In this document: piece by piece, positions 1,359-26,100 of the stretch
How the letters are laid out: every line of letters begins with the position of its first letter
How positions within the stretch are numbered: the first letter of the stretch is position 1
From: Podarcis erhardii
Taxonomy: Eukaryota
DNA: 64,000 nt
Direction: 5' to 3' (one strand)
Assembly: GCA_964252035.1 (NCBI GenBank)
Contig: OZ176212.1
Translations under genes and position numbers: made by a program
Notes under the pieces: generated by a model
The model's input: the letters and a program-made list of their open reading frames with translations, nothing else
The model's database searches: none
Told to the model about the DNA's origin: nothing

Positions 1359-1406
1359 TTATTTTAATAAGGACCACTTAATTTGTTCTTTGGCAGACTG
1401 CAGAAC
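1359..1406 (-). CDS. COPZ2: COPZ2 exon 9 coding part ([15 protein letters not shown])
   Basis: Acceptor ...ttgttcatag|GTTCTG; stop TAA at 1361-1359. Confidence 0.95.
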   Translation of the reverse strand, partial: VLQSAKEQIKWSLLK

Positions 1407-4400: not shown

Positions 4401-7400
4401 TGGGGATACCCAAATATTTTCAGAAACACAGAAAAACCTTGGGGGTTGGAACCAAAGAGGGGTCCCCACAAAACGATCTTAGAACAATTTCTAGACACTG
4501 AGCACACTTAAGTTTTTGTTGGGGGAGGAAGGGAAAACAAGGAGGAAGTTGGGATGGAGCAGGGAGTAGCTGGAATCCTGAAGCGCTGCACTCTGCACTG
4601 CAACATTCTGTTGCGGATCCCACTTGTCTAACTAATCCGCACGACGACACCGCCAGCTGAGAGCAGGGTACCTGCACGTAAGAGAAACTCCAGAGTAGAC
4701 TCACCTGAGTGACACTGTGTTCAGATAAAGAGCTGTCATCCACCTAAAAACAGGCAGGGGAAAGGTGAGGAAATTTAAGGGGATCTGAAGAGCAAAATCC
4801 TGAAGACACAAACAATGACATTTCCTTTAAATATACCACATGCAAGAAATTGAGCAGCTAAAGACCATTATGACAAAATTTAAGAATAAAATGTTGGGAG
4901 AGATACACCCAGGCCAACCCAGGCAGCTTTTTTCAGGGAGATCTCTTGAAGAACTAATTCAGAAACCGAGATGGGGAAAAACTCATCCGGTCTTGCACTG
5001 GCCAGGACAAAAGGTGGGTAGGTGATGGCTTGAGGGGGCAAAGTATAGTGTTTTTCACTCTACCTGCCCCCCTTTGCTGTTACCTCTGACAGCAGAGCAA
5101 CAAGGGCTGCAAAGTTTCTGCACCTGTAACTGGGAGGCTTGTGAGGGCAGATCTCCTTCTTTGCAGGCAGAAAGAGGGATTTGTTTTGTTCTATCCTACG
5201 GCCCCTAGGATGACTTTGCAGGGACCATGGGATTGTATCCTAACTAAATTTACGGACAAACTGGATGCAACACAATTCAGAGAATTATCAATGGTGTGCA
5301 TGACTTTTAAAAAAGCCCACTCCCCCACAATCTGGATTAGGCTCCTGGCAGGGGTGTGGGGGTGGGTGTTAAGGTAGGCTTTAACCCTTTCCCCCCTTCT
5401 GCAGTCCCAATCCAGATCAAATGCCTGCTCTTTGTAGTGAATGGGAAGGGAGCATGAATGGGAGCTTTTCTTCCATAACAACAGCAAGTGCAGCCCCCCT
5501 CCCAAATTCCCACACCAGATTCCTGATCTAGATCAGGCCTCATGAGCCTGCAGTTTGTTTTTTAAAAGCCATTCGCACAGCTGATAATTCTGTGAATGGT
5601 TTCTTCGTCTAGATTGGTCCTTAGTGGTCACCAGATAATAGGACAGGTCCTTTGACAGGTCAGTAGTGGATTAAAGAACAAGGAGAAGGTGGAAGTAATA
5701 AATGGCTACTTTTCACATGGGAGGGAATCTTCACATTGCATTGGGAATAGCGGTGTTTTAACACTCATAAATGATCTGGAGGTGGAAGGAAGCCGTGAGG
5801 TAGTGCAAAATTTTCAGACAACTTCAAATTATTCAAGATGGGAAAATTCCAATTAGACAGACCGTGAAGAATCCCAAAAGGTCTTTTCCAAATGGACAAT
5901 ACCGTATTGGCCTGAATATAAGCCACATTTTTTTCCAAGTTCAAATCGTGAAACGTTAAAGTGTGGCTTATATTTGCAACCTTATGCTGCTGGCAAAGCA
6001 GTGTGGCTCACCCCCCCTCCCCCCGCCGAGGAAGCAGCCCGAGAGCACGGGCACCCATCCTGTCCACGGCTCCCAATCCTCCCCCAAGCTGCCAAATTTT
6101 TAAGGTGTGGCTTATTTGCGGGTGTGGCTTATATTCGGGCCAATAGGGTAACATGGCAAATAAAATTCAATGTGCAGCTAAAGCGGTGTACATTGGACCT
6201 CATTGCTTCCTGCTTGATTATTCTCCCTCCATCGATGCCTCAGCCAGCAGGCAAGTGGTGGCAATGGTGGCACTGAGAGAGGGTAGGAAGAGGTGGCTTT
6301 TAACTCGGTGCAAGACCCTATTCACTGTCCCAGCATCCCTAGGTAAAGATTCTGTCTGACACCATGGGAGATATGCAACCACGCACTGTGGACAACGCTG
6401 AACTAAATGGACCATTCCTCTGACTTGGCTCCTCCTGTGCCTAATTCCTTTAGCTGTTCTTGGGTCTGTTACCAGCCACAGTCACTCAGGAGCTTTTCAC
6501 CACCAGGCTCCTGTGTGAAGCAGGCCGTAAACAGAATCACCCCCATAGCTTCTGGAGGTGGGTACAACACATGCAGAGATAGTTCTGCAAGAGCCCTTAA
6601 GGCTTGGAAGCCAGGCTACTGATATTACATCTCCTCTCCCAATCCTCTTTCCCATCACAGGAGCAAAACCATAGGAATAGCAGCAATATTTAACATCGAG
6701 AGCATTGTTACACTCAAAGAGTTGTCCATGCAGCAAGCTCATGTCCTCCTTAAAAAAAAAAAAACCACACTTGAAAAGGAAACCCAAATATGGGGGGAGT
6801 TTGTGCATATTCTGATGAAGTGGGAACATAGTTTAATACTGCTGTTGACACAGCATGCTTAGAAGCTCACACATACCACATCATACCAGGCACACACATG
6901 CTGCATGTGTATTGCGGCTGACTCATCCTATACAAATATAGGCTACCCCTCTGGCCACTTATTAAAAATCATTTATTTAGCTTTAATTATAGCATCCCTC
7001 CACCCGCATCCTCATGGGATGAAAGACAGGAGCAACCCCTTCGCAGCAGGACACTTACATAAAATGCAATAAAATTGTACCATTTTCTCTTCCCTTAATT
7101 GCAAAAAGTTTGCCATGTCTGCAATGGAAGGCACCCACAATCCTATTGTCCTGCTGCCTGCTGGAGACATTTCTCTTTCCACAAGCCTCTTTAGAGAATT
7201 AATTTGATGCAGTGTTGGTCGTTTCTTAATTTACTTTGAAATTTTATGTTTTAATGATTTTACTGTATACTCTTTTTTTTTAACGAATTGGCAGTTCAGA
7301 AATCCTCTTGTAAAATAAATATAATAAAAAGTTGCATTCCTGGGAGGCAAGGAAGCAACCAACCACTGGTAATACAAAGGTTTTGTTTGTGCCCTATAGC

Positions 7401-10400
7401 AGATTCAGTCTCTTTTGCATCTCCTTGGCTACCTTTGCTTCCTGCTTCTTTACCCAGCCACCTCCTTTCTGCCAACAACATACAATCTCATAGAACCATT
7501 GTGTGTGTGTGTGTTTATAACAACAGCCACTCGATACAAGCTGGCCAGAGATGCGCGAGTGCTGGCTTTACACAGGTTCTGGCCTAAATGGTACCATGAG
7601 ATCAAAATGTCTAGGGCTTTACAGTATCTGGGCTTTTTTTGCTTTCTTGAAATTGTGCCCCCCTCCATTCCTACATGCACACAAGCTAGTTTTAGCCACA
7701 GCCCCCAAAAGGGTCTAGAGGTGTGGGAAAAGCCAGACAGGTAGAAAGGAGAGAGAAAATCTCTGCAGACGATTTGGAATGGGGGATAAAGGAAGCAGGA
7801 TGATTTTAACCCAGCCAGCTGCCATGCTGCATTAGAGCGACGTGCTTAGAAGGAAGTCAAGTCTTACTCCTGGATCCTGTTTGCAAGAACAGTTCGCTAT
7901 TTGTAGAGCCTCTCGGGCAAAATTTCATTGTATTCGGAGTTACCCGTGATGTAATCAAAGAGAACAAAGCCATAAGCTGCAGGTTCCGGGATCGTCTGAG
8001 GTGGAAAGAGGTTCAGGGAGATGAGCAAGGGAATAAAGTGCAGAGATGAGAGAATATTTACAGGAAGGAAGGAAGGAAGGAAGGAAGGAAGGAAGGAAGG
8101 AAGGAAGGAAGGAAGGAAGGACCGGACCACTTACCCTAAAATTCAGCTTCTGGATGACTTGCTGGGCATCACTTTCCAAAATCACACTAAAATGGAGAAG
8201 AGAAATGAAACATCTTGGGAAGGGAGATTTTGATCTGTGTCTCTGGCAAGAACTATGCAGTTGTTATGCAGCTGTTGCGAGGAATCCAGAAGAATTTGGG
8301 GAAGCGATTCTAAAGCACTTTACACTACTGATCCAAATGCAACGTTTTGTTGCCACACACTGCATTTCTTTTAAGAAACAGTTTGTGCAATTGTGGCTGC
8401 AGCTTACTGGCTGTTGTCAGTGATGAACAGGACCATGGCATTCCTTGTGCCATTTGGCGACATTTATTTTATGTGCTGCTGTTTTCTAAAGCCCTGTTCT
8501 CATTTTATATCTGATCTCTCCCTAAGCTGCACCATGGAAGTATAAGAACATTTATGAGAGCCTTTAAAAACAAAAGTAGTAACTCCCACAAAGTTCCTCC
8601 CTTCCTCCTGGTATTTTGTGAAACCTTTTTCATTTCATTTCCCTCAAGCAATGGAGCAATGCATCAACTGCAATTCTGCCTTTTGAAAAGGAGAAATTAC
8701 CTTTAATTGCGAGTCTCTTACTAGTTCAAAAAGTAGGAGAAAACACATCTAATGGGTTGTTTGTAAAACATGAATTAATTGAGCTCACATTTTGTTACTT
8801 GTGTTTACATTTTAACTGGATTCCTTAATGTGATTTAGGTACTCAGCTAGTGTTTGAATCTCAGTGAGTTGGATGAGCTATGGCAGATCCTTTTAACTCC
8901 AGATTTAAAACAAGGTGACACGAGCCAGCTTGCTGAGATCTGCCAAATTAATTCATTTCCCTTTTCTCCCCTTCCACATGATCTCACCCGCCATCAACGA
9001 TCTCATCCACCACAAGGAACACCCCATCCATGTTTTCCATCAGGGTTCGCTTCTCCACATTCTTTCTAGATACAAGACAACACAAGGCAACTATGAGCAC
9101 CAGGAACATATCTACACTACTAGATTTAAACTAGTTTAGGAGTCATTTCTGTGCTGGTCAAGCCACATCTGGGGAACTGTGTCCAGTTTTGGGTGCCATA
9201 TTTTAAAGGAGGACCTTGACAAACTGGAGTGTGCCAGAAGGAGAACAACCAGGATGGTGAGAGTTCTGCAAAGGGGCAGAGCTTCTTGTTGTATTCGGAC
9301 AATAAAAAGGAGTGCTGCCCAAATGATAGCAAAATGGATGGTACGCAAGCCTCCTTAAGGTCAGCATTCCATGGGCAGGGTGCCACTACTGAAAAGGCTC
9401 TCTCCTTCATTGTCACTAACTTCACATTTGATAACAGGGCACCTAGAAAACAGTCACAGATGCAGATTCTTGCTATCAGTTTCTTGGTATTTGAGGAGAC
9501 AGTCCATTAAAATACCCTATAACTCAAGGGGAATAAAAGCTTTTCTGGATAGCAGAAGATACTTTGGGCTTGGAGATACTGTTAATCTGCTATTGCAATA
9601 GACACAATCCACTGAGAAATTCTCAGTGTTTTGCCATTCCCTGTAGCATGCAGCTTCACTTGCTTCGAGCCATCTTATGTTCTTTGCTCTACACCTACAC
9701 TTCTCTACAATACGCCCATCCTCTGTTTTGTACCAAACTATGATCTGGATTGGGGACGCTGGTGGCTCTGTGGGTTAAAACACAGAGCCTAGGACTTGCC
9801 GATCAGAAGGTCAGCGGTTTGAATCCCCGCGATGGGGTGAGCTCCTGTTACTCAGTCCCTGCTCCTGCCAACCTAGCAGTTCGAAAGCATGTCAAAGTGC
9901 AAGTAGATAAATAGGTACCACTCCGGCGGGAAGGTAAATGGCATTTCCGTGCGCTGCTCTGGTTCGCCAGAAGCGGCTTAGTCATGCTGGCCACATGACC
10001 CGGAAGCTGTATGCCGGCTCCCTCGGCCAATAAAGCGAGATGAGCGCCGCAACCCCAGAGTCGGTCATGACTGGACCTAATGGTCAGGGGTCCCTTTACC
10101 TTTACCTATGATCTGGATTACAAGCACATGGCCACACATACTATCTTTGGGCAACAGGTCAGAGCGATTATTTATTTCATCCCCTCCACTTTGTGAGAAT
10201 CTCAATGATTTCCACTGGGATTAATGATGATACTCACCGCAGCATATGGTTGAGAGATTCAAAGAGACAGGTGAGAACGGACATCAACATCAGCTATTAA
10301 AAAGTGGGGCCAAGAAAGGAAGACTCACGTCAACAAAAACAAAATCAAGTGATCTTTTAAACATGTACTGTATTTCTCCCTGACCATCTACTAGGAAACA

Positions 10401-13400
10401 TACAGAGCAGCCAGGACATAGGTTGTTTCCACATAGGGGCCCCAAAGCTTTGAAGTAGCTTTGTTTTTCTGAAATTAGCTGAGAACAGAAGCAAACGGTG
10501 ATTCTACACAACATGTAACATAGCACTATTACTAGGCAATGTGATGACTTTGTGCAATCTTTACTCAGAGTCCTGTCCATTCGTAAAGTCATGTGTAAGT
10601 TTAATTAGAACCCTTCTCCTCGTGGTTTCTACCTATAACTGTTTTCCGTTCAACATTTGGGGAGGGGGAGGAACAGAAATGAAAGGCAATGAAACCACAA
10701 AATAAGAAGTACAGGATATCACTTAAGGCTACATAAGTCACTATTTAGCTCATTTACCTGCTGGCTAAAAAAAAAAGTATTTACCTCATTCTCATGGGGG
10801 CTTCCCACTACATAAAAGAAAAGATCAATGCTGCTTTTATAGACAATAGTCAGACCTTCCAAAAAAGCAATCTCACCTGAGGAAAACAAGAAAGAGAAAT
10901 GATGTTTAGAGAGAGAAGCGGGAAAGCTCTTAGAATCATAGAATTGTATTGTTGGAAGGGACCACGAGGGGCATCTAGTCTAACCCCCAATGTTAAAATG
11001 CAGGAATCTTTCGCTCAGTGTGGGGCACAAACCCACAACCGTGAGATTAAGAGTCTAATGCTCTACCAACTGAGCTATCCCACCTTCGAGAACCTTACAA
11101 CTCTATCAGGCCCTGCCTCATTTGCTTGTGGACTGGTGACCTTATTTCTGATTTATTTTTTATGATTTCTAACAACTTAATTCTACCCATGCTGCAGTTG
11201 TAAATGGATGGAATCTGAGTCAGCCAGGTCTTTTGTGATGGGCTCCATCTGACTGAGATGGAGCTTGTTTACCTTTAAAAGCATGTGCCAGGCTGTCCCA
11301 GAGCTGAAGGGGTTTTCTCTTGACTGCACCCAGAACAGTGTGGCATGGCAGAGTTAGGGACCAAAAGGAGGCCCACCAACGTCCGACTGCAGATAAGGCA
11401 AACACCTTGTCCAACACACACAGGTTTCTAACAGTTAGAGCATACAAGATCTGTGCTTGGCATAACATCTTCTAAGTGGCAGGTTTTTATTTTATTTTTT
11501 AAAGACTGCTTATTCCTCTCCAGATAATGGCTAACATTTCTACAGGAGTACCTATGTGAAATGCAAACCAGTGGAGTGGATTTGTCTTGGGGTAAATATG
11601 TCTCCTAACCAGCAACTAAATTTGCTTTAGGTGTGCAGGCCAAATTCACCCCATACTCCTCCTCCTCCTCCTCCTCCTCCTCCTCCTCCTCCTCCTCCTC
11701 CGTGGTGCAGAAAAAACCTTCTGCAATGTGTCCTCCTCTTGATCTCTCTCCATCACTTAGGCCAGTTGCTGGACCACTCCACATTGCCATCACCTGTCCC
11801 TTTGTCACTCCAAGTGTCTCTTTTCACTATTGGTTGACGGAAATATTTCTGGTCCCACCTGCAGTATACATTTAAAGCAATATCATACCACTTTAAACAG
11901 TCATGGCTTTTCTCAACATATCCTGGGAGCTGTAATATTTTAAAGGGTATGGAGAGTCCCCTATTCCCCTCACAGAGCTATAGTTCCCAGAGTTCCCTAA
12001 TAAGAAAGACTGATTGTTAAACCACTTTGGGAACTGTAGCTCCATGAAGGGAATAGGAGTCTTCTAACAACTCTCAGGGACGCAGGTGGTGCTGTTGGTT
12101 AAACCACTGAGCCTAGGACTTGCCGATCAGAAGGTTGGCGGTTCGAATCCCCGCATCCCCTGCGGGGTGAGCTCCCGTTGCTCGGTCTCTGCTCCTGCCA
12201 ACCTAGCAGTTTGAAAGCATGTCAGAGTGCAAGTAGATAAATAGGTACCGCTCCAGCGGGAAGGTAAATGGCGTTTCCGTGCACTGCTCTGGTTCGCCAG
12301 AAGTGGCTTAGTCATGCTGGCCACATGACCCGGAAGCTGTACGCCAGCTCCCTTGGCCAATAAAGGAAGATGAGCACTGCAACCCCAGAGTCGGCCACGA
12401 CTGGACATAATGGTCAGGGGTCCCTTTACCTTTATAACAACTCTCAGCCCATTTAACAAACTACACTTCCCAGAATTCTTTTGGGGGCCTGTTTAAAGTG
12501 ACATGATACTGCGTTAAATGTACAGTGCAGATATGGTCTCTGTTTCTCAAGGGAAGGAGAAGAGCCAAGGAAATTTATGGTTGAGTACTTGGTGGTACTA
12601 GAAGCTGCTGGTTGTTTGTCTATACTTTAATGGCCACATACTCACTGTCAGTCTTGTGGGTCTTGTTGAAGACATTCCTTTCGAAACTCTTCTGTTCCTT
12701 CATAGATGGAAAGGTGTCATCATAATACTGTGGACAGCCAGAACAAGAGGCTCAAAATAAGGATGAGGCAGCATAGGAGTAGGGAATGGCTAACAAATAA
12801 GAATCACCTCTATCCAGACTTTAGAGCAGGGATTGGGAACCTGTGGTCTTCCAGCTGTTACTGGAGTACAAATTCCAACATCCATGATCACTGGATGTGC
12901 TGGCTAGGATTGATGGGAGCTGGAGATCCCACAACATTCATGTTCACTGAAAATGAAAATCCCCTCAATGTGAAAATTGGTAAAAGCCTGTTAGAGAACA
13001 GTGCTCCTGAGCAATAGATATAGCAATAGCTATCAGGCATGATAGCTAAATGGAACTTCCATATTCAGAGACAATCTGTCTCCAAGCACCAAATGCTAGG
13101 AATAAACAAGGGGATGCTATTAACTTCTTGGCCCACCTGTGAGCGCTCAGAAACACTTGGCTGGCTGTTGGTGTAAACAAAATGTTGGACTACATCAGAG
13201 TTGGGCCCTCAAATTTCTTGGAAGCTCCCACCTCTGGAATCTTCCCTTTATCTCTGGGTTGGAGGGAGAGGGAGTGAAGGTGAGAGAGAGCGAGAGAGAG
13301 ACTGGTCATGGATCTCTTGCCACTCTAGCCTTCATACTCTGCTTTCTCTCTCAACAGTTTTAACAGTCTTTCATGCTCTCGCTCCTGCACTCTATGGTTT

Positions 13401-16400
13401 CTCTCTCAAGAATGAGTAATGTGTACATTAGGCATGGGGAACATGTGGCCCTTAGTGTGGCTAATAGTCAGGGATGATAGGAGCTGTGTTCAGTGACATC
13501 TAGAGGTCCACAGGCCCTTCATCCCTCACATCAGTGATGAACAGAGAGTGAAAAACGATTATCTGTCAGAATGCATAAAGGTGGAGTCAGTGGCTGAAAT
13601 TGATGGGGACACATTTACGAGAACAGGAAGTAATTCCCATGATACGAAGACTCAACTGATGGAACTCAATGAACACAAAGTGTTTGGTCCCAAGTAGTGA
13701 AAGTAGCTTTTCAAAAGGATTGGATGGCTACATGGGGCACCAGTACAGCTGAGGCAATTAGCCAAGGTAATAAGGATCTCTTGCTGACCTCATGCTAGGA
13801 AATAACAACAGAAGGCAGATGTTGCCCTCCTTTTGCACTCCCCGCCCCCCCCCCAAACTTGGTTGGTTGCTGTTCAGCATAGCAATTCTTAATTTCTGGG
13901 ATGGAGTCAACAGGCCCACCCCAAAGAATGGTCTGAGGACACATACTGCGGCTGCACTGTTCAAATTAAGCAGGTCTCAACTCTCTGGATGTGAGATTGG
14001 CTGCAAGTCTCAGATAAGCTGCTCTGGCCTTCTCAAAGGAGGATTTCTTCTTTCATGTCTTTGACCCCCACTACTGAATGCACCCCAGCAGAGATCATCT
14101 ATTCCCAACCTGAAAAATGGTGTTCATAATTCTACCTGATGTCTTACCAGAGTGGAACTGAGCCTTTAAAAAAATTGGTGGAGGTACCTGCCTTGGCCAA
14201 AAGTCGCTGCCCAAAGCTGTCCAAGATGAAAATTGCCTTGACAGTGTAAAGGGACGGTTCCTAGGATCAAAATGAATTAATTTTACTTAGATGAAGGGAT
14301 AAGAATGTACTTTTAAAAAGCCAGAAAATATTAAGTGAGATCTATGAAAATGTCCCATTTAGCTTGTACTACCACAAATGCAAGTACCATATACCATGTA
14401 GCTAACATATCTAAATATCTAAATCAATGGGCATTTTTGGTTGAAGAGCAGGGTAGTTGTTTTACAAAAATAAAAAATAAATATTTGTATGGCACCATTA
14501 ATATATATGGAACTTAGCGCAAAAATACATACAAAAAAGGACCCTGCCCCCTATAAGCTTACAGTTCAAAATTGTTTTGATTTCCCAACTGCACTCAATC
14601 TTTTCATTCTCTGGACTGGCACTGCACCTCATTCATTCATATTTCTAGCTAACTAATTTCTGTGCATCTCCGACCTCACTGGTGTTTCTGCAAAGTAGGT
14701 CTAAAAGGTAAAGGTAAAGGTACCCCTGCTCGTACGGACCAGTCGTGACCGACTCTGGGGTTGCACGCCCATCTTGCTTAAGAGGCCGGGGGCCAGCGCT
14801 GTCCGAGGACACTTCCGGTTCACGTGGCCAGCGTGACGAAGCTGCTCTGGCGAGCCTGCACCAGCACAGCACACAGAAACGCCGTTTACCTTCCCGCTAT
14901 AAAGCGGTACCTATTTATCTACTTGCACTTAAGGGTGCTTTCGAACTGCTAGGTGGGCAGGAGCTGGGACCGAACGACGGGAGCTCACCCCGCCGCGGGG
15001 ATTCGAACCGCCGACCATGCGATCGGCAAGTCCTAGGCGCTGAGGTTTTACCCACAGCGCCACCCGCGTCCCCTGCAAAGTAGGTCTACACCCACACAAA
15101 AACAACAAAGCCCACCACCAGCAGCCATATATTATGGCCTACCAAGCGCTTCACAGCTCTTTCTTGCACTCCCCAAACAGGAAATGGTACTTCCTGTCTC
15201 TCTGGGTTCTCTCTACAGAACTTGTTCAAGATACAGTAAATTGTTTCCATAGCTTGTTTACTAAGGACCACTTGTTACTACTATTTCATGGTAGCGACTT
15301 CTTGGGTCCCTCACATTCTACATGGCAGGCTCCCCTGAGGTGCCTCCCTCCATGCCTTTGGGTCCCACTCTGCCTGAAACCCATCCCGTATGAGTTTCTC
15401 CATCTTCCTTTAGTAAGGATTCTGGATGTGGAATGCTGAACCAGCTTCCCTCTCCCTGGGGTCTGTCCCTTCCCCTTTCACAATACTGTTTCTTTGAGAC
15501 CCCACTAATTCTGAGTGCCATCTCTTTTAACTTTGTATGGCTGATTGCACTGTGTAAGTCCATCGGTATCTGAAGCATCATCGGTATCATGTGCATGCAC
15601 ATGAAAGCTTATACCAGAACAAACTTAGCTGATCTATAAGGTGCACTAGACAATTTTTTATTTTTATTATTTTTATTTCCACAATAAATCGTATCTCGCT
15701 AGCTTTGTTGACCCCAAAACCTAGAATTCTCCCCCATTTCCCCAGGGTTTCCTGATTCGCAATGTCTTTTCTGAGGTGCTCCTTGATGTGCTGTCCACTT
15801 AAGACTTTATAGTTGAAGACTGGGATGAGGAACCAGAGGCACTCCTAATGTTGTTGGACTCTCGCTAGCCGCAGGCAGCACAACCCACAGTCATAGATGC
15901 TGGGAGTTGTAGTCCAACATCTGCAGACCCTCAGCTTCCTCATCATTGATCTAAGACCTCCTGAAACACATACCTTGGGCCAAACAAAAAACAAATGTAA
16001 GCCATTTTGGCCTATAAGAAAAATTTCCTATTTCATATTATGGCAATACATTTATTAGCCTCCCCCTTAGGTCAATTATTCTCTTCTCCTCTGTTTTGTT
16101 TACAATTCTAGCCTGATTAAGACTCCTGGATAACTTGAAAGCTTAAACACTGCTTTGTTATATTTTGTTTAGTCTAATAAAGGCATTGCCCTAATATGGA
16201 TTTTGGAATATTTCCTTAAGTAACTGTCACACCCTGTCTGTGGCATAATCATTCACTCTGGATACTGCTTTTGGGTTAAAGGGTTCCCCCTGGAGAAAGC
16301 TCACTTTGGACATTACTTCAACACTAGTAGGGGTAAACTGGTGTCCAGACTAGACTAGTTTCAAGTGGAAGCTGGTATGATGGAATGTGGGTACACCCTC

Positions 16401-17213
16401 AAGAAAAATAGATTCACCTACCCACACAGAAAAGGAGCCTATCAGGAAGAAAGATAGGCTAGGCTGTGTTCCAAGCCTTCTCCCTTAGTTCTAGTTTTCT
16501 AGGCGCAGGGGAGTTTTGTTTCCCATAGGTAACCCCTTCAGTCATGTGACCCCCCCCCCTTGCAGTCCAACGTGGTGCAGCTGAGACACATGTTTACCAC
16601 TTCAGCAAAAGCTAGGCCCCTGCCGAGGACGCTTTGTCCTGTGCCCGTCCTTCTTAGGACGACGTTTGCAAACACGCGCGTCGCCTACTCCTCGGGCGCG
16701 CACACGGCGCTTGGGAACCGAGGTGCGTAAAGTTCAGAAAATGAACTGTACAACGCAGTTTGGAGAGCCGTTTCTGATCGCGCAGGCATTTGCTTCGGTG
16801 GCGGATTTCCCCCCGCTCCTACCGCGGGCCCGCCCTAGACATTTCTGCAGCCTCAGGCGCCAACCTCTAGCGGCGTCTCCCCCTCCGCCCCACTCAAATG
16901 AAGGTGCACCGCGCCTTTGGGGGCACCTGCGGCAGACAGTTCCACAGATGCTGGAGAGCAAACGCGTCGAAATGAATTGAACGACTGCCCTTCCGAGATG
17001 GCCAAAATCCTCTGCTTGAGGCGGCTGCCTAGCCCAAGGGCCGGCTTCCGCCCCTTTTCCCTCGCCGCTGCTTCCCCGCCCTCGTACCAGCATCAGCCCC
17101 GCGGGGATTTCCATGGGTCCGAGCGGCACTCCGGCGGCGCGCTCCCCGCCTCGTCCCCTTGCGGCGCCCCCGAAGTGGTCGTGCTGACGTGGCCGGGCCT
17201 CTGCCTTTTGCAT
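1359..17213 (-). CDS. COPZ2: Coatomer subunit zeta-2, complete 9-exon CDS: join(17088-17213, 14192-14260, 12646-12727, 10785-10876, 10238-10293, 8988-9065, 8135-8186, 4705-4743, 1359-1406); 642 nt, 213 aa
   Basis: Exons assembled by hand into one open frame: [10 protein letters not shown]...[39 protein letters not shown].../[25 protein letters not shown].../[33 protein letters not shown].../[45 protein letters not shown]. Internal exon sizes 69/82/92/56/78/52/39 match recalled zeta-COP structure. The N-terminal extension and position next to NFE2L1 favour COPZ2 over COPZ1. Confidence 0.96.
4705..4743 (-). CDS. COPZ2: COPZ2 exon 8 ([13 protein letters not shown])
   Basis: 39 nt; tttttag acceptor, GTGAGT donor. 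Confidence 0.93.
5630..6190 (+). mobile_element. Old CR1 LINE reverse-transcriptase fragment, split by a Tc1/mariner MITE
   Basis: Degenerate match to the recalled CR1 ORF2 segment (WIK...INDLE...KF(A)D..KLF), resuming after the MITE with WQIKFNV. Confidence 0.65.
5902..6148. mobile_element. Tc1/mariner (Tigger-like) MITE
   Basis: TIRs CCGTATTGGCCTGAATATAAGCCAC / GTGGCTTATATTCGGGCCAATAGGG flanked by TA on both sides. Confidence 0.85.
8063..8120. repeat. (GGAA)n microsatellite, 14 nt from the COPZ2 exon 7 donor
   Basis: Read directly. Confidence 0.98.
8135..8186 (-). CDS. COPZ2: COPZ2 exon 7 ([17 protein letters not shown])
   Basis: 52 nt; ttttag acceptor, GTAAGT donor. Confidence 0.95.
8988..9065 (-). 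CDS. COPZ2: COPZ2 exon 6 ([25 protein letters not shown])
   Basis: 78 nt; tctag acceptor, GTGAGA donor. Confidence 0.95.
9140..9270 (+). mobile_element. CR1 LINE ORF2 fragment
   Basis: Resembles LV.PHL..CVQFW.P.FK.D.DKLE..Q.R.T.MV. Confidence 0.7.
9752..10105 (+). mobile_element. Sauria SINE, full length
   Basis: tRNA-like head, (ACCTTT)n tail, 14-bp TSD CTATGATCTGGATT at 9738-9751 and 10106-10119. Confidence 0.92.
10238..10293 (-). CDS. COPZ2: COPZ2 exon 5 ([19 protein letters not shown])
   Basis: 56 nt; aatag acceptor, GTGAGT donor. Confidence 0.95.
10785..10876 (-). CDS. COPZ2: COPZ2 exon 4 ([30 protein letters not shown])
   Basis: 92 nt; ttcctcag acceptor, GTAAAT donor. Confidence 0.95.
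10931..11081 (-). mobile_element. SINE with tRNA-Lys(CTT)-derived head and CR1-derived 3' tail
   Basis: Minus strand GGGATAGCTCAGTTGGTAGAGCATTAGACTCTTAATCTCACGGTTGTGGGTTTG... then GATTCCTGCA...ATTCTATGATTCTA. Confidence 0.8.
11656..11701. repeat. (CTC)n microsatellite
   Basis: Read directly. Confidence 0.98.
11858..12532. mobile_element. Long-TIR palindromic MITE interrupted by the 12077 SINE; a related partial copy lies at about 20720-20910
   Basis: CTGCAGTATACATTTAAAGCAATATCATACCACTTTAAACAG pairs with CTGTTTAAAGTGACATGATACTGCGTTAAATGTACAGTGCAG. Confidence 0.7.
12077..12434 (+). mobile_element. Sauria SINE, full length, nested in a palindromic MITE
   Basis: Same consensus as the 9752 copy; TSD TAACAACTCTCA at 12065-12076 and 12435-12446. 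Confidence 0.92.
12646..12727 (-). CDS. COPZ2: COPZ2 exon 3 ([27 protein letters not shown])
   Basis: 82 nt; ccacag acceptor, GTGAGT donor. Confidence 0.95.
14192..14260 (-). CDS. COPZ2: COPZ2 exon 2 ([23 protein letters not shown]), GC donor
   Basis: 69 nt; cctag acceptor; the frame-preserving donor is AAG|GCAGGT. Confidence 0.92.
14704..15072 (-). mobile_element. Sauria SINE, CpG-rich (probably young) variant
   Basis: (AAAGGT)n at the left end; 16-bp TSD CTGCAAAGTAGGTCTA at 14688-14703 and 15073-15088. Confidence 0.92.
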
Positions 17214-20016: not shown

Positions 20017-20923
20017 AAGATGAAAGATCTTACAACACAGTGCTCATTACAACTGGGGCCTGGTCCTGGAACAAGTGGCACAGATTAAACAGAGCACATC
20101 TTAAGTCTCTCTGTGCTCCCTTTCTTTCCTTATCAAGAAATGAGGCCGCATTTAGGAAAGTGCTCTGAAGAAACAGAGATGTGTAAATACCTTAAGGGCT
20201 TGGTGAACGGTTTCATCTGTACTTTCACCATGTACTTTTAAGGGGAGGTGAGCAATACCTCTAGATAGAGGTTGCTGAGTTTGCCTGGGATGGCACACCC
20301 TACCCTGGCAGAGGAAGCAGAAAAGCACACCTGACCTAAAGTAATACCAGCATCTTTAACTTCCAAATGCCTCTAAGCAAAAACTTACCAGTAATCTCTT
20401 AGTTTGCACCCAGATTTAACCTGTTTCTGTTTTCAGGTCTTTTGGTGCACATTCTCATGCTAAGACTGGGCAAACCAGTTTCCCAGACACTTTCTCATTC
20501 TGCAAATGAGTGTGCACTGGCTGGTCAAACAGGGAAAGTGACCTCCTGCACCAGTTGTCTAGGAGTTAGCATGCATTATTCGTGGTCATGTCACATTGCA
20601 CAGAGAGAGCCTTTGAATAATAGGATAGTTTGGTTTATAACAATTGATAGATAGATCTGTTGGATATTCGATTTTTATTTGCTGGTGGTCAATGTTTTTC
20701 TATCTATTCTTTCCCCTCCCAGAGCTACAATTCCCATAGTTCCCTGGGAAGAAAGGTTAATGGTTCAACTACTCTGGAAATTGTAGCTCTGTTACAATTG
20801 GAGAGAGGTAGCTCTTCACCTCAACTACAGTTCCCATAATTCTTTGGGGGAAGCGATGACTGTTTAAAGTGGTATCATAGTGTTTTAAAGGTGTGGTGTG
20901 AATGTGGCCTAAATGTTGTAATT

Positions 20924-21128
20924 CAGTGGTGTCCAAACTTTTTTCAAAGAGGGCCAGATTTGATGAAGTGAAGGGCCGTGCGGGGGCTGACCAAAGGGCC
21001 GACCAAAGTTATTGACCTTTTTAGGATTTTACCCCAAAGTTGTTGAGCTTTTTGTTGGATTGGAGTTGAGCTATTTTTAGGATTTTATCCCAGGAAATAG
21101 GACCCGAAACGGACTTTGGGCATGCCGG
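20924..21128. mobile_element. hAT-type MITE directly upstream of the LSP1 retrocopy
   Basis: CAGTGGTGTCCAAA...TTTGGGCATGCCGG ends; imperfect 8-bp TSD TTGTAATT / TTGTAAGC. Confidence 0.65.
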
Positions 21129-21175
21129 TTGTAAGCTCTACATGTGGGCAGAACTTGTCATTAATGAATGGAAGT

Positions 21176-23194
21176 GGCTTTGCTTCCTGTTTTCCTGGAG
21201 GTTGAGGGAGAGCCACAGCTCCAGTTCCTAGGTCACCAAGGCGTTCCTATGAGGAAGAAGAAGGCAATCTGATGGAAGCAGAAGCCAAGCTAGGGCAGAT
21301 TCACCTGGATCAGGAGTTTCCCATCTTCATCCGGTTTGCACCTGGGCCTTCAAACTTCCTCAAGTTTTCCTCTGGTTCCATCTCACAAGATCAGCTTGAA
21401 GAAGAAGCAGAGCTGGAACAGCAGCAAAAGCTTACCGAAGATGTGGGTATAAGAGAAGAGAATCAGGATGTCAGAGAGGATGTCGAAGAGGAACCACAGC
21501 ATGTTGCAGAAGAGAATCGGCATGAAGAAGAGAGAGAAATGCAAGAGGAGAAGAAAAGGAGAAGGAATGAGGAGGAAGAGGCACCAGAAAAACGGCAAAG
21601 AACTCCAAGCACTTCCAGCCAAGAGGAAGAGTCTCAGCCTCCTTCAAGCCCTACGGTAAAGATCGTTGAAAGAACTGAATCCCTGAACCGCTCCATACAG
21701 AAAAGTAACAGTGTGAAGAAGACACAGCCACCTCTTCCAGTTTCAAAGATTGATGACAAACTTGAGCAGTACACTCATGCCATTGAGACGTCCATCAAGT
21801 CTCCGAAGCCAGTGCGTCAGCTTTCCATTGACCTGCCTTCCACTAGTGCTGCAGTGGCCAGCACGAAAAGCCTCTGGGAGACAGGGGAAGTGGCTCAAAC
21901 CTCTGTGAAGACAATCCCCTGTAAGGACATTGTGGCTGGAGACATTGTGAATAAGAGAAGCCTGTGGGAGCAGAAAGAGAGCCCAAGGACAGATGAAAAT
22001 GTCAAGCTTCCTCAGAAGCTTCCTGGCAAGAAGTACAAGTATGTGGCAACAGGGCACGGCCAATACAAAAAGGTCTTGATAGAAGATGGGGCAACCGAAA
22101 AATAGCCTGCTTTGGCACCAAAACACACAGGTTGGCTTGCTCCGTGATTGATGGACACCTGAGGCAATACTTCTATGCAGTGCTGATGTTCCCCCTGCTA
22201 AAAAGGAACTGTGTTCAAAGGATGACTTCACTTCCCAGCTCAAATCCAGCAGCCTGCTTCAAAACCCAGCTACTGATTTTCTTCACAAATGGGAGCATCT
22301 CTCCAAGTTTGACTTCATTTAGACTTGGACACAGCATCAACTCAAGTGGCAATAATCTAGTTGTTTTTTAAAAGCTATCTCTAGATCGGCTTTTCATTCT
22401 TTTTTTTGGAAAATTAGCTTGCGTGCTGTTCTGTACCCTAATTTCTTAATTTAGTAAAAAGAGAGGTTTGCCTACTTCTCCTGGCCAAGCCTAGGGCCTA
22501 TCTTAATAGCCAAGGAGGAACGTTTAATTTTCCTTAACTACTTTTGAGTTGTGAGCAAGAAAGTGAAAGCAGTAGGAAAACTTAGGCGTTTATGGCTGAG
22601 TCTAAGGATCTTTCTACCACCTAAGCCTTCAAAATGACAAGGCATACCAGTGTCTCACCTCTTGACTAACATGGATTCTTTTGATGATACAGGATGCAGT
22701 CTTGAGCATGAATTGGTGCCCAGTGCACCTAGGAGGCCTCTTCCCCCTCACACCTCAACCATTCCTGCCTTGAAGGGAGCATGGTGGTGGTTCTGGCAAA
22801 GTTACCAGATTGGTGTATCGGTTGGGATGAAGGCCAGCTCCCAGAAGACAGCCAAATGGGTTCTCAGAGGACCCATGGCTGCTAATACTTTGCAAGGAGT
22901 GCCTGACTTGGTGCAAAGAGTGCCACACCTTGCAGTATAAATGCATCTCTTAGTTTGCCAACTTCAAACACTTTTTGCCTCTCCCTCATTATACAAAAAA
23001 GGGAGAGGGCACAATATCCTGCTTCTAGCCTCCCAAGACTAGCAACTCAAGGGCTTAGACAATGTTATACATATCCCCACCCCACCTCCTCTGTTGCTTC
23101 TACTTGGTACCATTCTGTGTGACCTGGACTTGTTTTTGTAAGCCTTTAATAAAAATTCTGAGAAACAAAAACAAAAAAAATAAAAATAAAAAAA
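21176..23194 (+). mobile_element. LSP1: Processed LSP1 retrocopy, full extent (2019 bp)
   Basis: Perfect 16-bp direct repeat ATTAATGAATGGAAGT at 21160-21175 and 23195-23210; AATAAA at 23148-23153; A-rich tail at 23161-23194. Confidence 0.92.
21272..22105 (+). CDS. LSP1: Intronless lymphocyte-specific protein 1-like ORF (277 aa), caldesmon/LSP1 family F-actin-binding C-terminal domain; retrocopy
   Basis: ERTESLNRSIQKSNSVKKTQPPLPVSKIDDKLEQYTHAIET...RQLSIDLPS...VASTKSLWETGEV...CKDIVAGD...KRSLWEQK...GKKYKYVATGHGQYKKVL matches the recalled LSP1 C-terminus, which is multi-exon in the parental gene; no introns, stops or frameshifts here. Confidence 0.92.
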   Translation: MEAEAKLGQIHLDQEFPIFIRFAPGPSNFLKFSSGSISQDQLEEEAELEQQQKLTEDVGIREENQDVREDVEEEPQHVAEENRHEEEREMQEEKKRRRNEEEEAPEKRQRTPSTSSQEEESQPPSSPTVKIVERTESLNRSIQKSNSVKKTQPPLPVSKIDDKLEQYTHAIETSIKSPKPVRQLSIDLPSTSAAVASTKSLWETGEVAQTSVKTIPCKDIVAGDIVNKRSLWEQKESPRTDENVKLPQKLPGKKYKYVATGHGQYKKVLIEDGATEK

Positions 23195-26100
23195 ATTAAT
23201 GAATGGAAGTTGGAAAAGCATAGGACTGGCCTTAAGGCTAACTTGTGTTTCTTAACACGTTTTTAAAACCAGAAGTAGCATAAAGCAAGGAAACAGGCTG
23301 TATCAGCGAAAACCAGTGTGTTATACAGGTTAGATCTATGGGCTGCAATATGTTAGGAAGTTCTACTGCACAAGCTCCTTTGAAAGGAAACAGGAACTAC
23401 ATAAGAGCTCACATTCATTTCAGTGGGCCTACTCTAAGACAAATTCCTGGTGGACTATGCAGGTAGGATGAGGGAAATGCTCAGCCTTGAAATTCACCGG
23501 GTGACCTTGGGCCAGTCTACCTTGTAGGGTTGTTGTGAAAGTAAATGGGAGAAGAGAATTATCTGTGTTGCACTGAGCTCCTTGGAAGAAAGGCAGGCTA
23601 TAAATGCAATGAAGTAAACATGTAAAAAAAGGGGGGGGGAGCAGAGTACAAGAGAGAAGATTTGATGTACAACACACAATCCATCAAGAAGTTCTCTTGC
23701 ACAAGCGCTGATGAAAATAATAGGAACTACGCAAGAACTACACTATGCATTTCAGTGGGCGTTCTGCAGGAGAAATTCCTCATAGATTGTGACCATTTTA
23801 AATAGTAGGTGGGGAATATGCCATTTGGATTTTTCATCTCAAGCACCAAAATATATTAACCTAGCCCTCTTTTTAAACTTTTGATCCACAGAAGCCTTCT
23901 TTGGCCCTCTTGTAACACTCTGATTTTGAATCAACAAAGCAATGGCTCTGCTAGTGTTTACAGAAGACCCAACAAAGAAATTCTTTCATCATCCTATATA
24001 TTTATTCATAGTAGAGAACATATTTCAGATCAATCCGGTTCTTGCCAAGCCACAGCCAGGATTGTAGGATGGAGCTTATTTTTAGATTTTGTTCTGGACT
24101 TACCGGATGCCCTCCCTGCACTGCAATTAGGCTAGGAAAAAGGCTCCTAGCTGTTTCCAAGCGTAATTACCATATTGCGGGTGTAAGACTGTTAGGCGGG
24201 TGAGGGTGGATAAGAGGAGGAGGAGGAAGGGTTAACTTTCTCTATGTGCTGTGGCCATTTATTTGAATGAAGTCTCCCATTGGCTCCCAGAGAAGTCTGT
24301 TCTCAAGTCTTATACAGGCTACAGGCGGGGATATGTATTATTAAAGGTTTGTTATTGGGCCCAACTAAATGGCCTACATGCTTCCTCAGTTACCCACAAC
24401 TGTATTTGATTTTAATCTGATTTGAGAGAGCCAAGAAGCTTCCAAGGTATCGGTTCTTCATGATCTAACAACTGCTGCAATTTGAGCTCTTCAGGAGGAG
24501 CTCTTCTCCCCCTTCTACTCAACAGCCACTTCAAGCTTGAAGATCAAATTCCAAATTCAGGTTTTGCAAGTATTAAGGGCTATTCTTATGGCTATGTGCA
24601 CCTTTACAAAACTTGAGAATGTGAGTGGAAGCTTTCGTTTTTGTTTTGATCCCAAAGTCATTTAAACTAAGAGTCAGTTTGAATCTGAGCACAGAAACAG
24701 TTCCAGAGAGTCTGGACCTTGGCACCATTTGGTTTAGAAACTGGCAATAAATAAAAACAATAACAAAAGTTATAGCAGGTAGAACCAAGGGGATGTTTCC
24801 TGGTCTAGGGCTCAGGCCTTGTGTGATAATACTGTTGCAGCTGCTGGCTGACTTTTCTTTTGTTAGGAAGATAGCTCGTTAATTACCCGGAATGGTTGGT
24901 TATTCTTTCATCAGTTGGTGTTAATGGTTATGAAATGCCTCCTCCTGATAGTGTATGTGGTTTTACATGACACACGACCTGATATGTGGAATGGGAGTGC
25001 GAGAGTTGCTTTCTGATGAATCTTCCGCCTTGTGGGAGTGCCTGTTTATGCCCGTTTACCTTATACAATATTTGTATATAAAGCAATTAATGGATACCTG
25101 AAGTATCCCCTGCTGTTTTTGTTTTTGTTTTACTAAGGAAAACAAGATCTGCCAGCACATCACCTGGAACTTCTCATCTAGAGAAGTAGCTTAGTTCTTG
25201 TGCGGTTCCTATTCTTTTCAGTGGGGCTTGTGCAAGAGAACTTCCTGATGGATTGTACACCATACATTTCCATAGTCTGTTTCAAGTGTTCAAAAGAACT
25301 GATACATTATCTCAGTAATGCTTACAACAAACCTGTAAGGTTGGCCAGTATTACTGTCTAGGGTGTCTTGCCCAATAGGGGCAAGTGGCGTGGGGCGCCA
25401 GGGTGACAAGTTCTGGAGGGCACCAGGGAAGAGGTGGAGGCTGGAAGCGGCACTTCCCGGCATCAGCTTGCTGCCCTTGCCCGCCTCTGCCATGCCATGC
25501 CAAAGCAGCGCCGCGCCCGGAGCCTCTGCCTGCTGTGGCCACTGCGGCATGGGCGCCAGGGAAGAGGCAGAGGCTGGGCGCAGCGCCTCTTGGCATCAGC
25601 TCACCACCTCAACCACCTCGCTGAGGCAACGCTGTGCCCGGAGCCTCTGCCTCTTCCCTGCCGGAGGAGCTGCCCTCCAGCCGCTGCCTGCCTGCCTGCC
25701 TCCTCCAGCCCCGCAAAGCTGCTGGCAGTGCCTTAAAAAGGTTGGCAACTCTGGGAAACCGGGGGGGGGGGGGGGCGGAGGGATCTTTGCACCACAACAC
25801 TGGATATACTTAAGACGGCCCTGATACAGTACTGTTGCTTGCTGAAAGTCTATCAGTTTGTGTCTGAGTGACACTTGAATCAGGAACATTCCAGCCCACA
25901 CTTTGAGCTACTACAACACAGCTGCTCATTTTGAATCTATTTATTATAACTACAATTCAGCCTTGGAAGCAATAATAATTTCGCTGCTTCTGAGCATGTG
26001 CAGAAACCCCTTCCTTGATTCTCAGCGCTCAGTGACTGAATCTGGGATCTGGGAGATGAACTTTGAATGTGAGGGTGTAGCTTTAACCTAAGTTTGATCT

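What the first reader, a model, noticed from the sequence alone, without database searches (positions are those of the whole stretch)
21160..23210. Intact intronless LSP1 retrocopy between COPZ2 and NFE2L1, with perfect 16-bp TSD and poly(A) remnant
Seen: a 2019-bp insert bounded by identical ATTAATGAATGGAAGT repeats holds a 96-nt leader, an uninterrupted 834-nt ORF (277 aa), a ~1.05-kb 3' UTR, AATAAA and an A-rich tail. Known: the ORF matches the LSP1 actin-binding C-terminus, including the MK2-site contexts KSNSVKK and RQxSI (human Ser204/Ser252). Parental LSP1 is multi-exon and, as I recall for amniotes, lies near TNNI2/TNNT3, not here. Inference: this is a lineage-specific retrogene candidate. 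The perfect TSD means it may be young, so an open ORF does not by itself prove function.
Basis: partly seen in the sequence, partly recalled or inferred. Interest (0 to 1): 0.85.

Follow-up and report, generated by a model that had tools for sequence, protein, structure and literature searches.

The report
Young LSP1 processed retrocopy in Podarcis
A wall-lizard (Podarcis) genome carries a very recent, reverse-transcribed copy of an LSP1 messenger RNA between COPZ2 and NFE2L1; it is real and cleanly built, but it is an ordinary young retrocopy with no sign yet of being a working gene.

Summary
A 2019-bp intronless LSP1 copy (21176-23194) sits between exact 16-bp target-site duplications. It has AATAAA and a 25-nt A-rich tail, and lies between divergent COPZ2 (- strand) and NFE2L1 (+ strand).

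It reproduces nine parental exons with eight introns removed. These include a previously unnoticed non-coding alternative first exon and a 3'-UTR exon 11 kb past the stop codon.

The 277-aa ORF is not full LSP1. It starts at Met154 of the 433-aa protein, which is the first in-frame AUG of that alternative transcript.

The site is empty, with a single target copy, in P. muralis, P. raffonei, P. lilfordi and Zootoca. It is also empty in a relative only about 1.2% diverged, so the insertion is very recent.

In the source species' own reads only two positions (22677, 22699) show a differing parental allele. Most changes that looked private to the copy are also present in relatives' parental genes.

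An open ORF after so few substitutions is expected 81-96% of the time, dN/dS cannot be computed, and no RNA data exist for the species.

Verdict: a new member of a known kind. It is most likely a neutral processed pseudogene-in-waiting. First readers noted other retrocopies elsewhere in this genome.

The parts
21160..21175 (+). 5' target-site duplication (ATTAATGAATGGAAGT)
   Evidence: Exact repeat of 23195-23210. A single copy is present at the empty site in P. lilfordi and Zootoca, with 1-nt variants in P. muralis and P. raffonei.
21176..21176 (+). Untemplated G at the 5' end of the insert
   Evidence: It is not part of the TSD, since the 3' copy is followed by T, and it is not in any parental gene, where T precedes GCTTTG. 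Inference: reverse-transcribed cap G, which would mark a full-length cDNA.
21177..21225 (+). Copy of a non-coding alternative first exon of LSP1 (49 nt), containing an in-frame TGA at 21203-21205
   Evidence: It matches P. muralis L002 66569-66617 and is followed there by a GTAAGT donor. It is 94-100% conserved in four lacertids, and its upstream 150 nt are highly conserved.
21226..22135 (+). Seven joined parental exons (junctions near 21547/8, 21661/2, 21704/5, 21787/8, 21925/6, 22006/7), running through the stop codon plus 30 nt
   Evidence: blastn against four parental loci. Every block is bounded there by AG...GT splice sites.
21249..21272 (+). Short upstream ORF (7 codons) whose TGA overlaps the main ATG (TGATG)
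   Evidence: Read directly from the sequence. It is inherited from the parental coding sequence.
21272..22105 (+). 277-aa ORF equal to LSP1 residues 154-433 of the canonical isoform. It holds the acidic middle region, the C-terminal actin-binding half and the KSNSVKK/RQLSI kinase-site contexts.
22136..23169 (+). Copy of the terminal 3'-UTR exon of LSP1
   Evidence: 98.1% identical to P. muralis L003 4913-3868, which lies 11 kb beyond the stop-codon exon, past a nested PRR33-like gene. An RNA contig of a related species runs unbroken across this junction (record 8).
22677..22699 (+). The only two positions (22677 T, 22699 G) where the source species' own reads also show the parental allele (G, A)
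   Evidence: table 3, X16 columns. Relatives E and D and the RNA of organism A all carry G and A.
23148..23153 (+). AATAAA polyadenylation signal
   Evidence: Homology to the parent ends about 16 nt downstream of it.
23170..23194 (+). A-rich tail (25 nt, with one C and two T interruptions)
   Evidence: It is absent from the parental genomic sequence, which continues GGTTTGGCTC....
23195..23210 (+). 3' target-site duplication

Best explanation
This is a very young processed retrocopy of LSP1. It was made when a LINE reverse transcriptase (L1-type target-primed reverse transcription) copied a fully spliced, polyadenylated LSP1 mRNA into an AT-rich site. That site lies about 4 kb upstream of COPZ2 in one Podarcis lineage.

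The template was not the canonical mRNA. It was a transcript from an alternative internal promoter, with a 49-nt non-coding first exon spliced onto the exon that encodes ...PRSPRRSYEEEEGNL-M154. The copy is therefore probably full-length for its template, and its first in-frame AUG gives a 277-aa N-terminally truncated LSP1.

The copy arrived without the parental promoter. It is nearly identical to its parent and is found in no relative tested. It is most likely selectively neutral, a processed pseudogene that has not yet had time to decay, and not an established gene.

Shown here: retrocopy structure, source isoform structure, empty sites and youth. Inferred: the LINE machinery, the cap-G/full-length status, germline expression of the alternative transcript, and lack of function.
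For: 1. Eight introns are removed exactly at parental AG/GT boundaries, including a 5'-UTR intron and an 11-kb 3'-UTR intron.
2. The tail starts about 16 nt after AATAAA, where the parental genomic sequence diverges.
3. The 16-bp TSD is exact.
4. Single-copy empty sites are present in P. muralis, P. raffonei, Zootoca and P. lilfordi. One contig of relative E joins 21174 directly to 23210, and E's flanks differ from the window at only about 20 of 1681 positions (record 26).
5. Source-species contigs cross both junctions with no differences. The 3' junction contig is unbroken at about flank depth, and body contigs have roughly double depth. That fits two near-identical copies collapsed together.
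6. Only 22677 and 22699 show a second, parental allele in the source species.
7. The 9-nt deletion, N55T and most other apparently private changes are shared by the parental exons of relatives E and D.
8. The leader exon, its donor and a TATA-like TTAATTA at -35 to -29 are conserved in four lacertids.
9. An ORF this long stays open with probability 0.81-0.96 after 1-5 neutral substitutions.
10. The exact protein is absent from a 15-billion-protein collection.
11. Lizards are known to carry hundreds of retrocopies, about half of them intact (PMC3136929).
Against: - No RNA data exist for the source species, so lack of transcription is assumed and has not been shown.
- The copy points away from the COPZ2 CpG-island promoter about 4 kb off, which could supply divergent transcription.
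- Logan contigs drop variants, so the count of two retro-versus-parent differences is a minimum.
- S16F, D49E and possibly T215I hit otherwise conserved residues. They could sit in either copy.
- The alternative leader exon was not seen in the one RNA run laid, which is from another species.
- The nick site (TC|ATTAAT) is AT-rich but is not a textbook TT|AAAA.
Confidence: 0.77

Rival explanations
1. It is a newborn functional retrogene. The copy is transcribed, for example by divergent transcription from the COPZ2 CpG-island promoter or from the repeat just upstream. It would make a 277-aa truncated LSP1 that retains the C-terminal F-actin-binding half and the kinase sites, acting as a new or dominant-modifying cytoskeletal factor.
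For: - The ORF is open and contains the whole conserved C-terminal half. LSP1's high-affinity F-actin site is C-terminal and the protein is a MAPKAP-kinase-2 substrate (PMC2213033).
- The copy is oriented away from a CpG-rich promoter about 4 kb off.
- No empty allele was seen in the sequenced individual.
- In Anolis, intact retrocopies are often expressed (PMC3136929).
Against: - The site is empty in all five relatives tested, so there is no conservation to point to.
- Near-identity to the parent makes the open ORF uninformative.
- The weak Kozak context and the overlapping uORF are merely inherited from the parent.
- No promoter was carried along.
- No transcript evidence is available.
Confidence: 0.13
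2. It has a non-coding or regulatory effect. The insert matters as DNA or RNA rather than as protein. It could perturb the shared COPZ2-NFE2L1 intergenic regulatory region, or yield an RNA that cross-regulates parental LSP1 through near-identical sequence.
For: It sits in a 24-kb intergenic region between two divergent housekeeping or stress genes. It is nearly identical to the parent over 2 kb.
Against: There is no evidence of transcription. The flanks at the site are ordinary repeat-rich sequence (depth table). This reading is purely speculative.
Confidence: 0.07
3. It is an assembly artefact or cDNA contamination rather than a genomic insertion.
For: Intronless cDNA-like sequences can in principle contaminate assemblies.
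Against: The exact TSD and precise empty sites in relatives argue against this. So do independent short-read contigs of the species that cross both junctions with no mismatches at flank-level depth.
Confidence: 0.01

Closest known systems
L1-type processed pseudogenes / mRNA retrocopies of vertebrates (including the ~400 retrocopies reported in Anolis carolinensis, PMC3136929)
   Same: Introns are lost at every junction. The poly(A) tail sits at the authentic cleavage site and a 16-bp TSD flanks the insert. The copy landed on another chromosome without a promoter, and the orthologous sites are empty.
   Different: Nothing differs in kind. The notable details are that the template was an unannotated alternative-first-exon isoform and that the 3' UTR is itself spliced across an 11-kb intron hosting another gene.
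Functional retrogenes that recruit nearby or bidirectional CpG promoters (established knowledge; not tested here)
   Same: The ORF is open, and the copy lies about 4 kb from a CpG-rich promoter and points away from it.
   Different: There is no expression evidence, no cross-species conservation and no measurable purifying selection. The copy is younger than a 1.2% species split.
Parental LSP1 (lymphocyte-specific protein 1; Pfam Caldesmon PF02029)
   Same: 93-96% identical over residues 154-433. The C-terminal actin-binding half and the KSNSVKK/RQLSI motifs are retained.
   Different: It lacks the N-terminal 153 residues, including the conserved TAQWSVEDEEEAARERRRRERERQLRSQ segment. It has no introns and none of the native promoters.
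Other LSP1 pseudogenes (for example the chicken entry named 'Lymphocyte-specific protein 1 pseudo 1', seen)
   Same: They are additional LSP1-derived loci in sauropsid or vertebrate genomes.
   Different: They are independent events in other lineages. Their mode of origin was not examined here.

Membership tests
LINE-mediated processed retrocopy | All parental introns are precisely absent | tested here: met
   Nine exon blocks map to four parental loci, each bounded there by AG...GT. Eight introns are removed.
LINE-mediated processed retrocopy | Poly(A) tail at the parental cleavage site, downstream of AATAAA | tested here: met
   Homology to the parent ends at 23169, 16 nt after AATAAA, and a 25-nt A-rich tail follows.
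LINE-mediated processed retrocopy | Target-site duplication flanking the insert | tested here: met
   The 16-bp repeat is exact, and none of 100 shuffles gave two matches.
LINE-mediated processed retrocopy | Empty orthologous site with a single target copy in relatives | tested here: met
   P. muralis, P. raffonei, P. lilfordi and Zootoca assemblies, plus the contig joint 21174>23210 in relative E.
LINE-mediated processed retrocopy | Location unlinked to the parent | tested here: met
   In P. muralis the parent is on record OZ076954.1, next to troponin and PRR33-like genes. The COPZ2 site is on OZ076966.1.
LINE-mediated processed retrocopy | L1-endonuclease-like TT|AAAA nick site | tested here: inconclusive
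   The site reads ...CTTGTC|ATTAATG. It is AT-rich but does not match the consensus, and the lizard LINE responsible was not identified.
Functional retrogene | Uninterrupted ORF | tested here: met
   277 codons. The probability by chance is 0.81-0.96 at this age, so this is uninformative.
Functional retrogene | Purifying selection (dN/dS well below 1) on the retrocopy branch | tested here: inconclusive
   Only two proven retro-versus-parent differences exist and both are in the UTR. The two to four coding changes specific to this lineage (S16F, D49E, possibly T215I) are mostly nonsynonymous and cannot be assigned to either copy.
Functional retrogene | Transcription of the copy | not testable with these tools
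   No RNA runs of the source species were offered. The RNA run that was laid belongs to a species whose contig carries the 9-nt parental insertion.
Functional retrogene | Retention with an open frame across species | tested here: not met
   The copy is absent from all five relatives examined.
LSP1 protein family | Caldesmon-type C-terminal domain | tested here: met
   PF02029 at E=2.9e-45, covering residues 37-219.
LSP1 protein family | Conserved N-terminal acidic region of the canonical isoform | tested here: not met
   The ORF begins at Met154, and an in-frame TGA lies upstream in the leader.

The most novel reading that the evidence does not exclude
The copy could be a just-born gene. Transcribed divergently from the COPZ2 CpG-island promoter, it would supply a constitutive, N-terminally truncated, actin-binding LSP1 in tissues or germ cells where the leukocyte gene is silent. 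It would be fixed in one Podarcis species within the time of a ~1% species split. As a by-product it reveals a conserved lacertid-specific short LSP1 isoform, from an alternative promoter plus a new Met154 start.
Probability: 0.08. Interest if true: 0.5.

Novelty: new member of a known kind. Interest (0 to 1): 0.2.

Why it matters
On its own this is an ordinary young retrocopy and should not be reported as a new gene.

Its modest value is threefold:
1. It is a clean, datable presence/absence marker within Podarcis and is direct evidence that mRNA retroposition is still active in wall lizards.
2. It acts as a fossil cDNA. It documents an unannotated LSP1 transcript with an internal promoter, a 49-nt leader and a spliced 3' UTR around a nested PRR33-like gene. 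That transcript must have been present in germline or early-embryo cells.
3. If RNA data appear, it would be a time-zero case for following the fate of a retrocopy that landed next to a bidirectional promoter.

Tried and rejected
- **Chance 5' truncation or retained intron.** Rejected. The leader is a separate upstream exon with its own GTAAGT donor.
- **Chimeric or template-switched 3' UTR.** I suspected this when only 30 nt matched within 10 kb of the stop. Rejected after walking downstream, because the source is a normal terminal exon 11 kb away, and RNA of a relative spans the junction.
- **Five substitutions and a 3-aa deletion private to the retrocopy**, which would have implied an older, decaying copy. 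Rejected. The parental exons of relatives E and D share the deletion and most of the changes.
- **Source species is P. muralis.** Rejected. The flanks are 4.4% diverged.
- **Pfam on ten long window ORFs** gave nothing.
- **Rfam** gave only a tRNA-like hit.
- **Look-ups that found nothing.** P0144 (Lacerta COPZ2) and P0140 (P. lilfordi isoform) were not on record, so the Lacerta agilis site was not tested.
- **Contig depth as a count of hidden retro/parent SNPs.** Too confounded by neighbouring high-copy repeats to use quantitatively.
- **Relative D.** Its site status could not be read from the pieces listed.
- **Literature.** A search for an LSP1 retrogene found nothing relevant, and one search failed on syntax.
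Full report
**Observation.** The 16-mer ATTAATGAATGGAAGT occurs exactly twice in the 64-kb window, at 21160-21175 and 23195-23210. None of 100 dinucleotide shuffles gave two matches. The 2019 bp between the two copies hold a 96-nt leader and an ORF at 21272-22105 encoding 277 aa. After the ORF come about 1.06 kb of 3' UTR, AATAAA at 23148-23153 and an A-rich tail. The ORF hits Pfam Caldesmon (PF02029, 2.9e-45). Its best database matches are lacertid 'lymphocyte-specific protein 1' sequences at 93-96% identity. The motifs KSNSVKK and RQLSI are present. The C-terminal F-actin site and the MAPKAP-kinase-2 substrate status of LSP1 are documented in PMC2213033.

**Neighbours.** Short conserved motifs locate coatomer-zeta exons on the minus strand at about 14260, 9061 and 1391. 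The ORF at 17213-16734 begins with the COPZ2-specific N-terminus and retrieves 'coatomer subunit zeta-2' of Lacerta and Zootoca at 95% identity. NFE2L1 exons lie on the plus strand at 41.5-42.1 kb and 60.2 kb. The copy therefore sits in the divergent COPZ2-NFE2L1 intergenic region. Its 5' end is about 4 kb from the COPZ2 ATG and it points away from COPZ2.

**Relation to the parent.** I fetched the P. muralis LSP1 locus. blastn splits the insert into nine blocks, each bounded in the parent by AG...GT.

- The first block (21177-21225) is not part of the canonical coding sequence. It matches a separate 49-nt exon 2.7 kb upstream of the next exon, followed by a GTAAGT donor.
- That exon and its donor are 94-100% conserved in P. 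muralis, P. raffonei, Lacerta agilis and Zootoca.
- The 150 nt upstream of it are almost invariant. They include a GGAA-rich tract and a TTAATTA box at -35 to -29.
- The leader carries an in-frame TGA in the parents too. The first in-frame AUG of such a transcript is therefore Met154 of the 433-aa protein.
- That Met is lacertid-specific. Other squamates and birds have R or T there.
- Base 21176 is a G found neither in the TSD nor in any parent. I read it as a copied cap nucleotide, which is an inference.

At the 3' side, homology stops 30 nt after the stop codon, exactly at a parental CAG|GTAGGT donor. The remaining 1.03 kb matches, at 98.1%, a terminal exon 11 kb further on, beyond the antisense PRR33-like gene. 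An RNA contig from a related species runs unbroken from 21350 to 23157 (record 8), so this 3'-UTR splice is normal for LSP1 mRNA. Retrocopy and parent agree until 16 nt past AATAAA, after which only the retrocopy has the 25-nt A-rich tail. The insert is thus a faithful, probably full-length cDNA of an alternative-promoter LSP1 mRNA. The alternative leader itself was not seen in that one RNA run, where the contig reaching 21226 continues upstream into other sequence (record 7).

**Species and age.** COPZ2 upstream flanks from four assemblies all show an empty site with one copy of the target.

| Species | Target at the empty site |
|---|---|
| Zootoca vivipara | exact 16-mer |
| P. lilfordi | exact 16-mer |
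| P. muralis | GGCAGT variant |
| P. raffonei | GGAAAT variant plus a 13-bp deletion |

Substitution distances in these flanks are as follows.

| Pair | Distance |
|---|---|
| Window to P. raffonei | 3.0% |
| Window to P. lilfordi | 4.2% |
| Window to P. muralis | 4.4% |
| P. muralis to P. raffonei | 3.8% |
| Each Podarcis (P. lilfordi not compared) to Zootoca | about 6-6.5% |

The source is therefore a Podarcis species other than these three. Public runs are coded. Organism C holds 90-96% of the sampled words including the flanks, so it is the source species.

Laying contigs of four runs on 20200-24200 gave the following results.

- **Relative E.** A 2029-nt contig passes from 21174 directly to 23210, which is an empty site. 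E's flanks differ from the window at only 5/541 and 15/991 positions, about 1.2%.
- **Organism C, junctions.** Contigs cross the 5' junction (21025-21206) and the 3' junction (23140-24200 and beyond) with no differences. The 3' contig is unbroken at flank-like depth, and no empty allele is listed.
- **Organism C, body.** Contigs break at exon boundaries and have roughly double depth. This is expected if the retrocopy and parental exons are near-identical and collapse together.
- **Organism C, differences.** Only 22677 and 22699 show a second allele (G, A). That allele matches E, D and the RNA species, so these are genuine retrocopy-versus-own-parent differences.
- **Relative D.** Its site status could not be read from the listed pieces.

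The insertion is younger than a split about one third as deep as that between P. muralis and P. raffonei. It may be much younger, since the observed minimum is 2 differences in 2 kb. Contigs can hide variants, so 2 is a lower bound.

**Coding changes.** Against the four assembled parents the copy looked as if it had private changes: S16F, D49E, N55T, K89E, T215I, a 9-nt deletion and a few synonymous sites. However, the parental exon 2 of relatives E and D aligns to the copy with no gap and only five differences, and E's exon 8 shows none. The deletion and most substitutions therefore arose in the parental gene of this clade before retroposition. Only S16F and D49E, plus at most two more that may include T215I, are specific to the source lineage, and they cannot be assigned to the copy or the parent. 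No meaningful dN/dS can be computed. Simulation shows that the ORF would remain open with probability 0.96 to 0.81 after 1-5 random substitutions. The exact protein is not in a 15-billion-sequence collection, so no source annotates it.

**Expression.** No RNA runs of the source species were offered. The RNA species that was laid carries the 9-nt parental insertion, so its contig is parental mRNA. This criterion remains untested.

**Context.** Anolis has about 404 retrocopies, of which 54% are intact (PMC3136929). First readers of this scan noted several other mRNA retrocopies in the same genome (unverified). A literature search found no described LSP1 retrogene.

**Verdict.** The structure is real and textbook. 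It is a very young, lineage-specific processed retrocopy of an alternative-promoter LSP1 transcript. Most likely it is a neutral pseudogene-in-waiting (about 0.77), and the functional-retrogene reading (about 0.13) awaits RNA and population data. Novelty: a new member of a known kind. Interest is low, apart from the by-product that it documents an unannotated, conserved alternative LSP1 promoter and short isoform in lacertids.

Noticed in passing
window 20922-21131 (high-copy region 20602-21137): A ~210-bp repeat insertion flanked by GTTGTAA lies 30 bp upstream of the retrocopy. It is present in the window and P. raffonei, and present in P. lilfordi except for an ~80-bp gap in the alignment, but absent in P. 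muralis and Zootoca. Read depth there reaches 10^5, so it belongs to a very abundant SINE-like family and is a possible phylogenetic marker within Podarcis.
   Followed up: partly
L002 66420-66617 (P. muralis LSP1), and equivalents L007 65081-65278, L009 67935-68132, L008 65837-66034: A conserved candidate internal promoter (GGAA-rich tract, TTAATTA box) and a 49-nt non-coding first exon of LSP1. No short-isoform protein starting at Met154 appeared among the lacertid LSP1 proteins retrieved. Met154, which would start a 277-280-aa isoform, is lacertid-specific.
   Followed up: partly
L003 10001-11587 / L002 80077-81663: A PRR33-like (DUF4643) gene lies antisense inside the 11-kb 3'-UTR intron of lacertid LSP1. 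LSP1's stop codon is only 30 nt before the last exon junction.
   Followed up: partly
window 11020-11077 (-): A tRNA-like Rfam hit (36 bits) inside a COPZ2 intron, probably a tRNA-derived SINE head.
   Followed up: no
window 1360-17213 (COPZ2): No mir-148/152-family hit at the Rfam gathering threshold anywhere in the window. From memory, mammalian COPZ2 hosts MIR152 in an intron.
   Followed up: no
window 21504: Relative E's parental LSP1 shows T>C at the second position of codon 78 (V to A). All assembled lacertids differ instead at the adjacent third position (21505). It is a small oddity in a fast-evolving acidic region.
   Followed up: no
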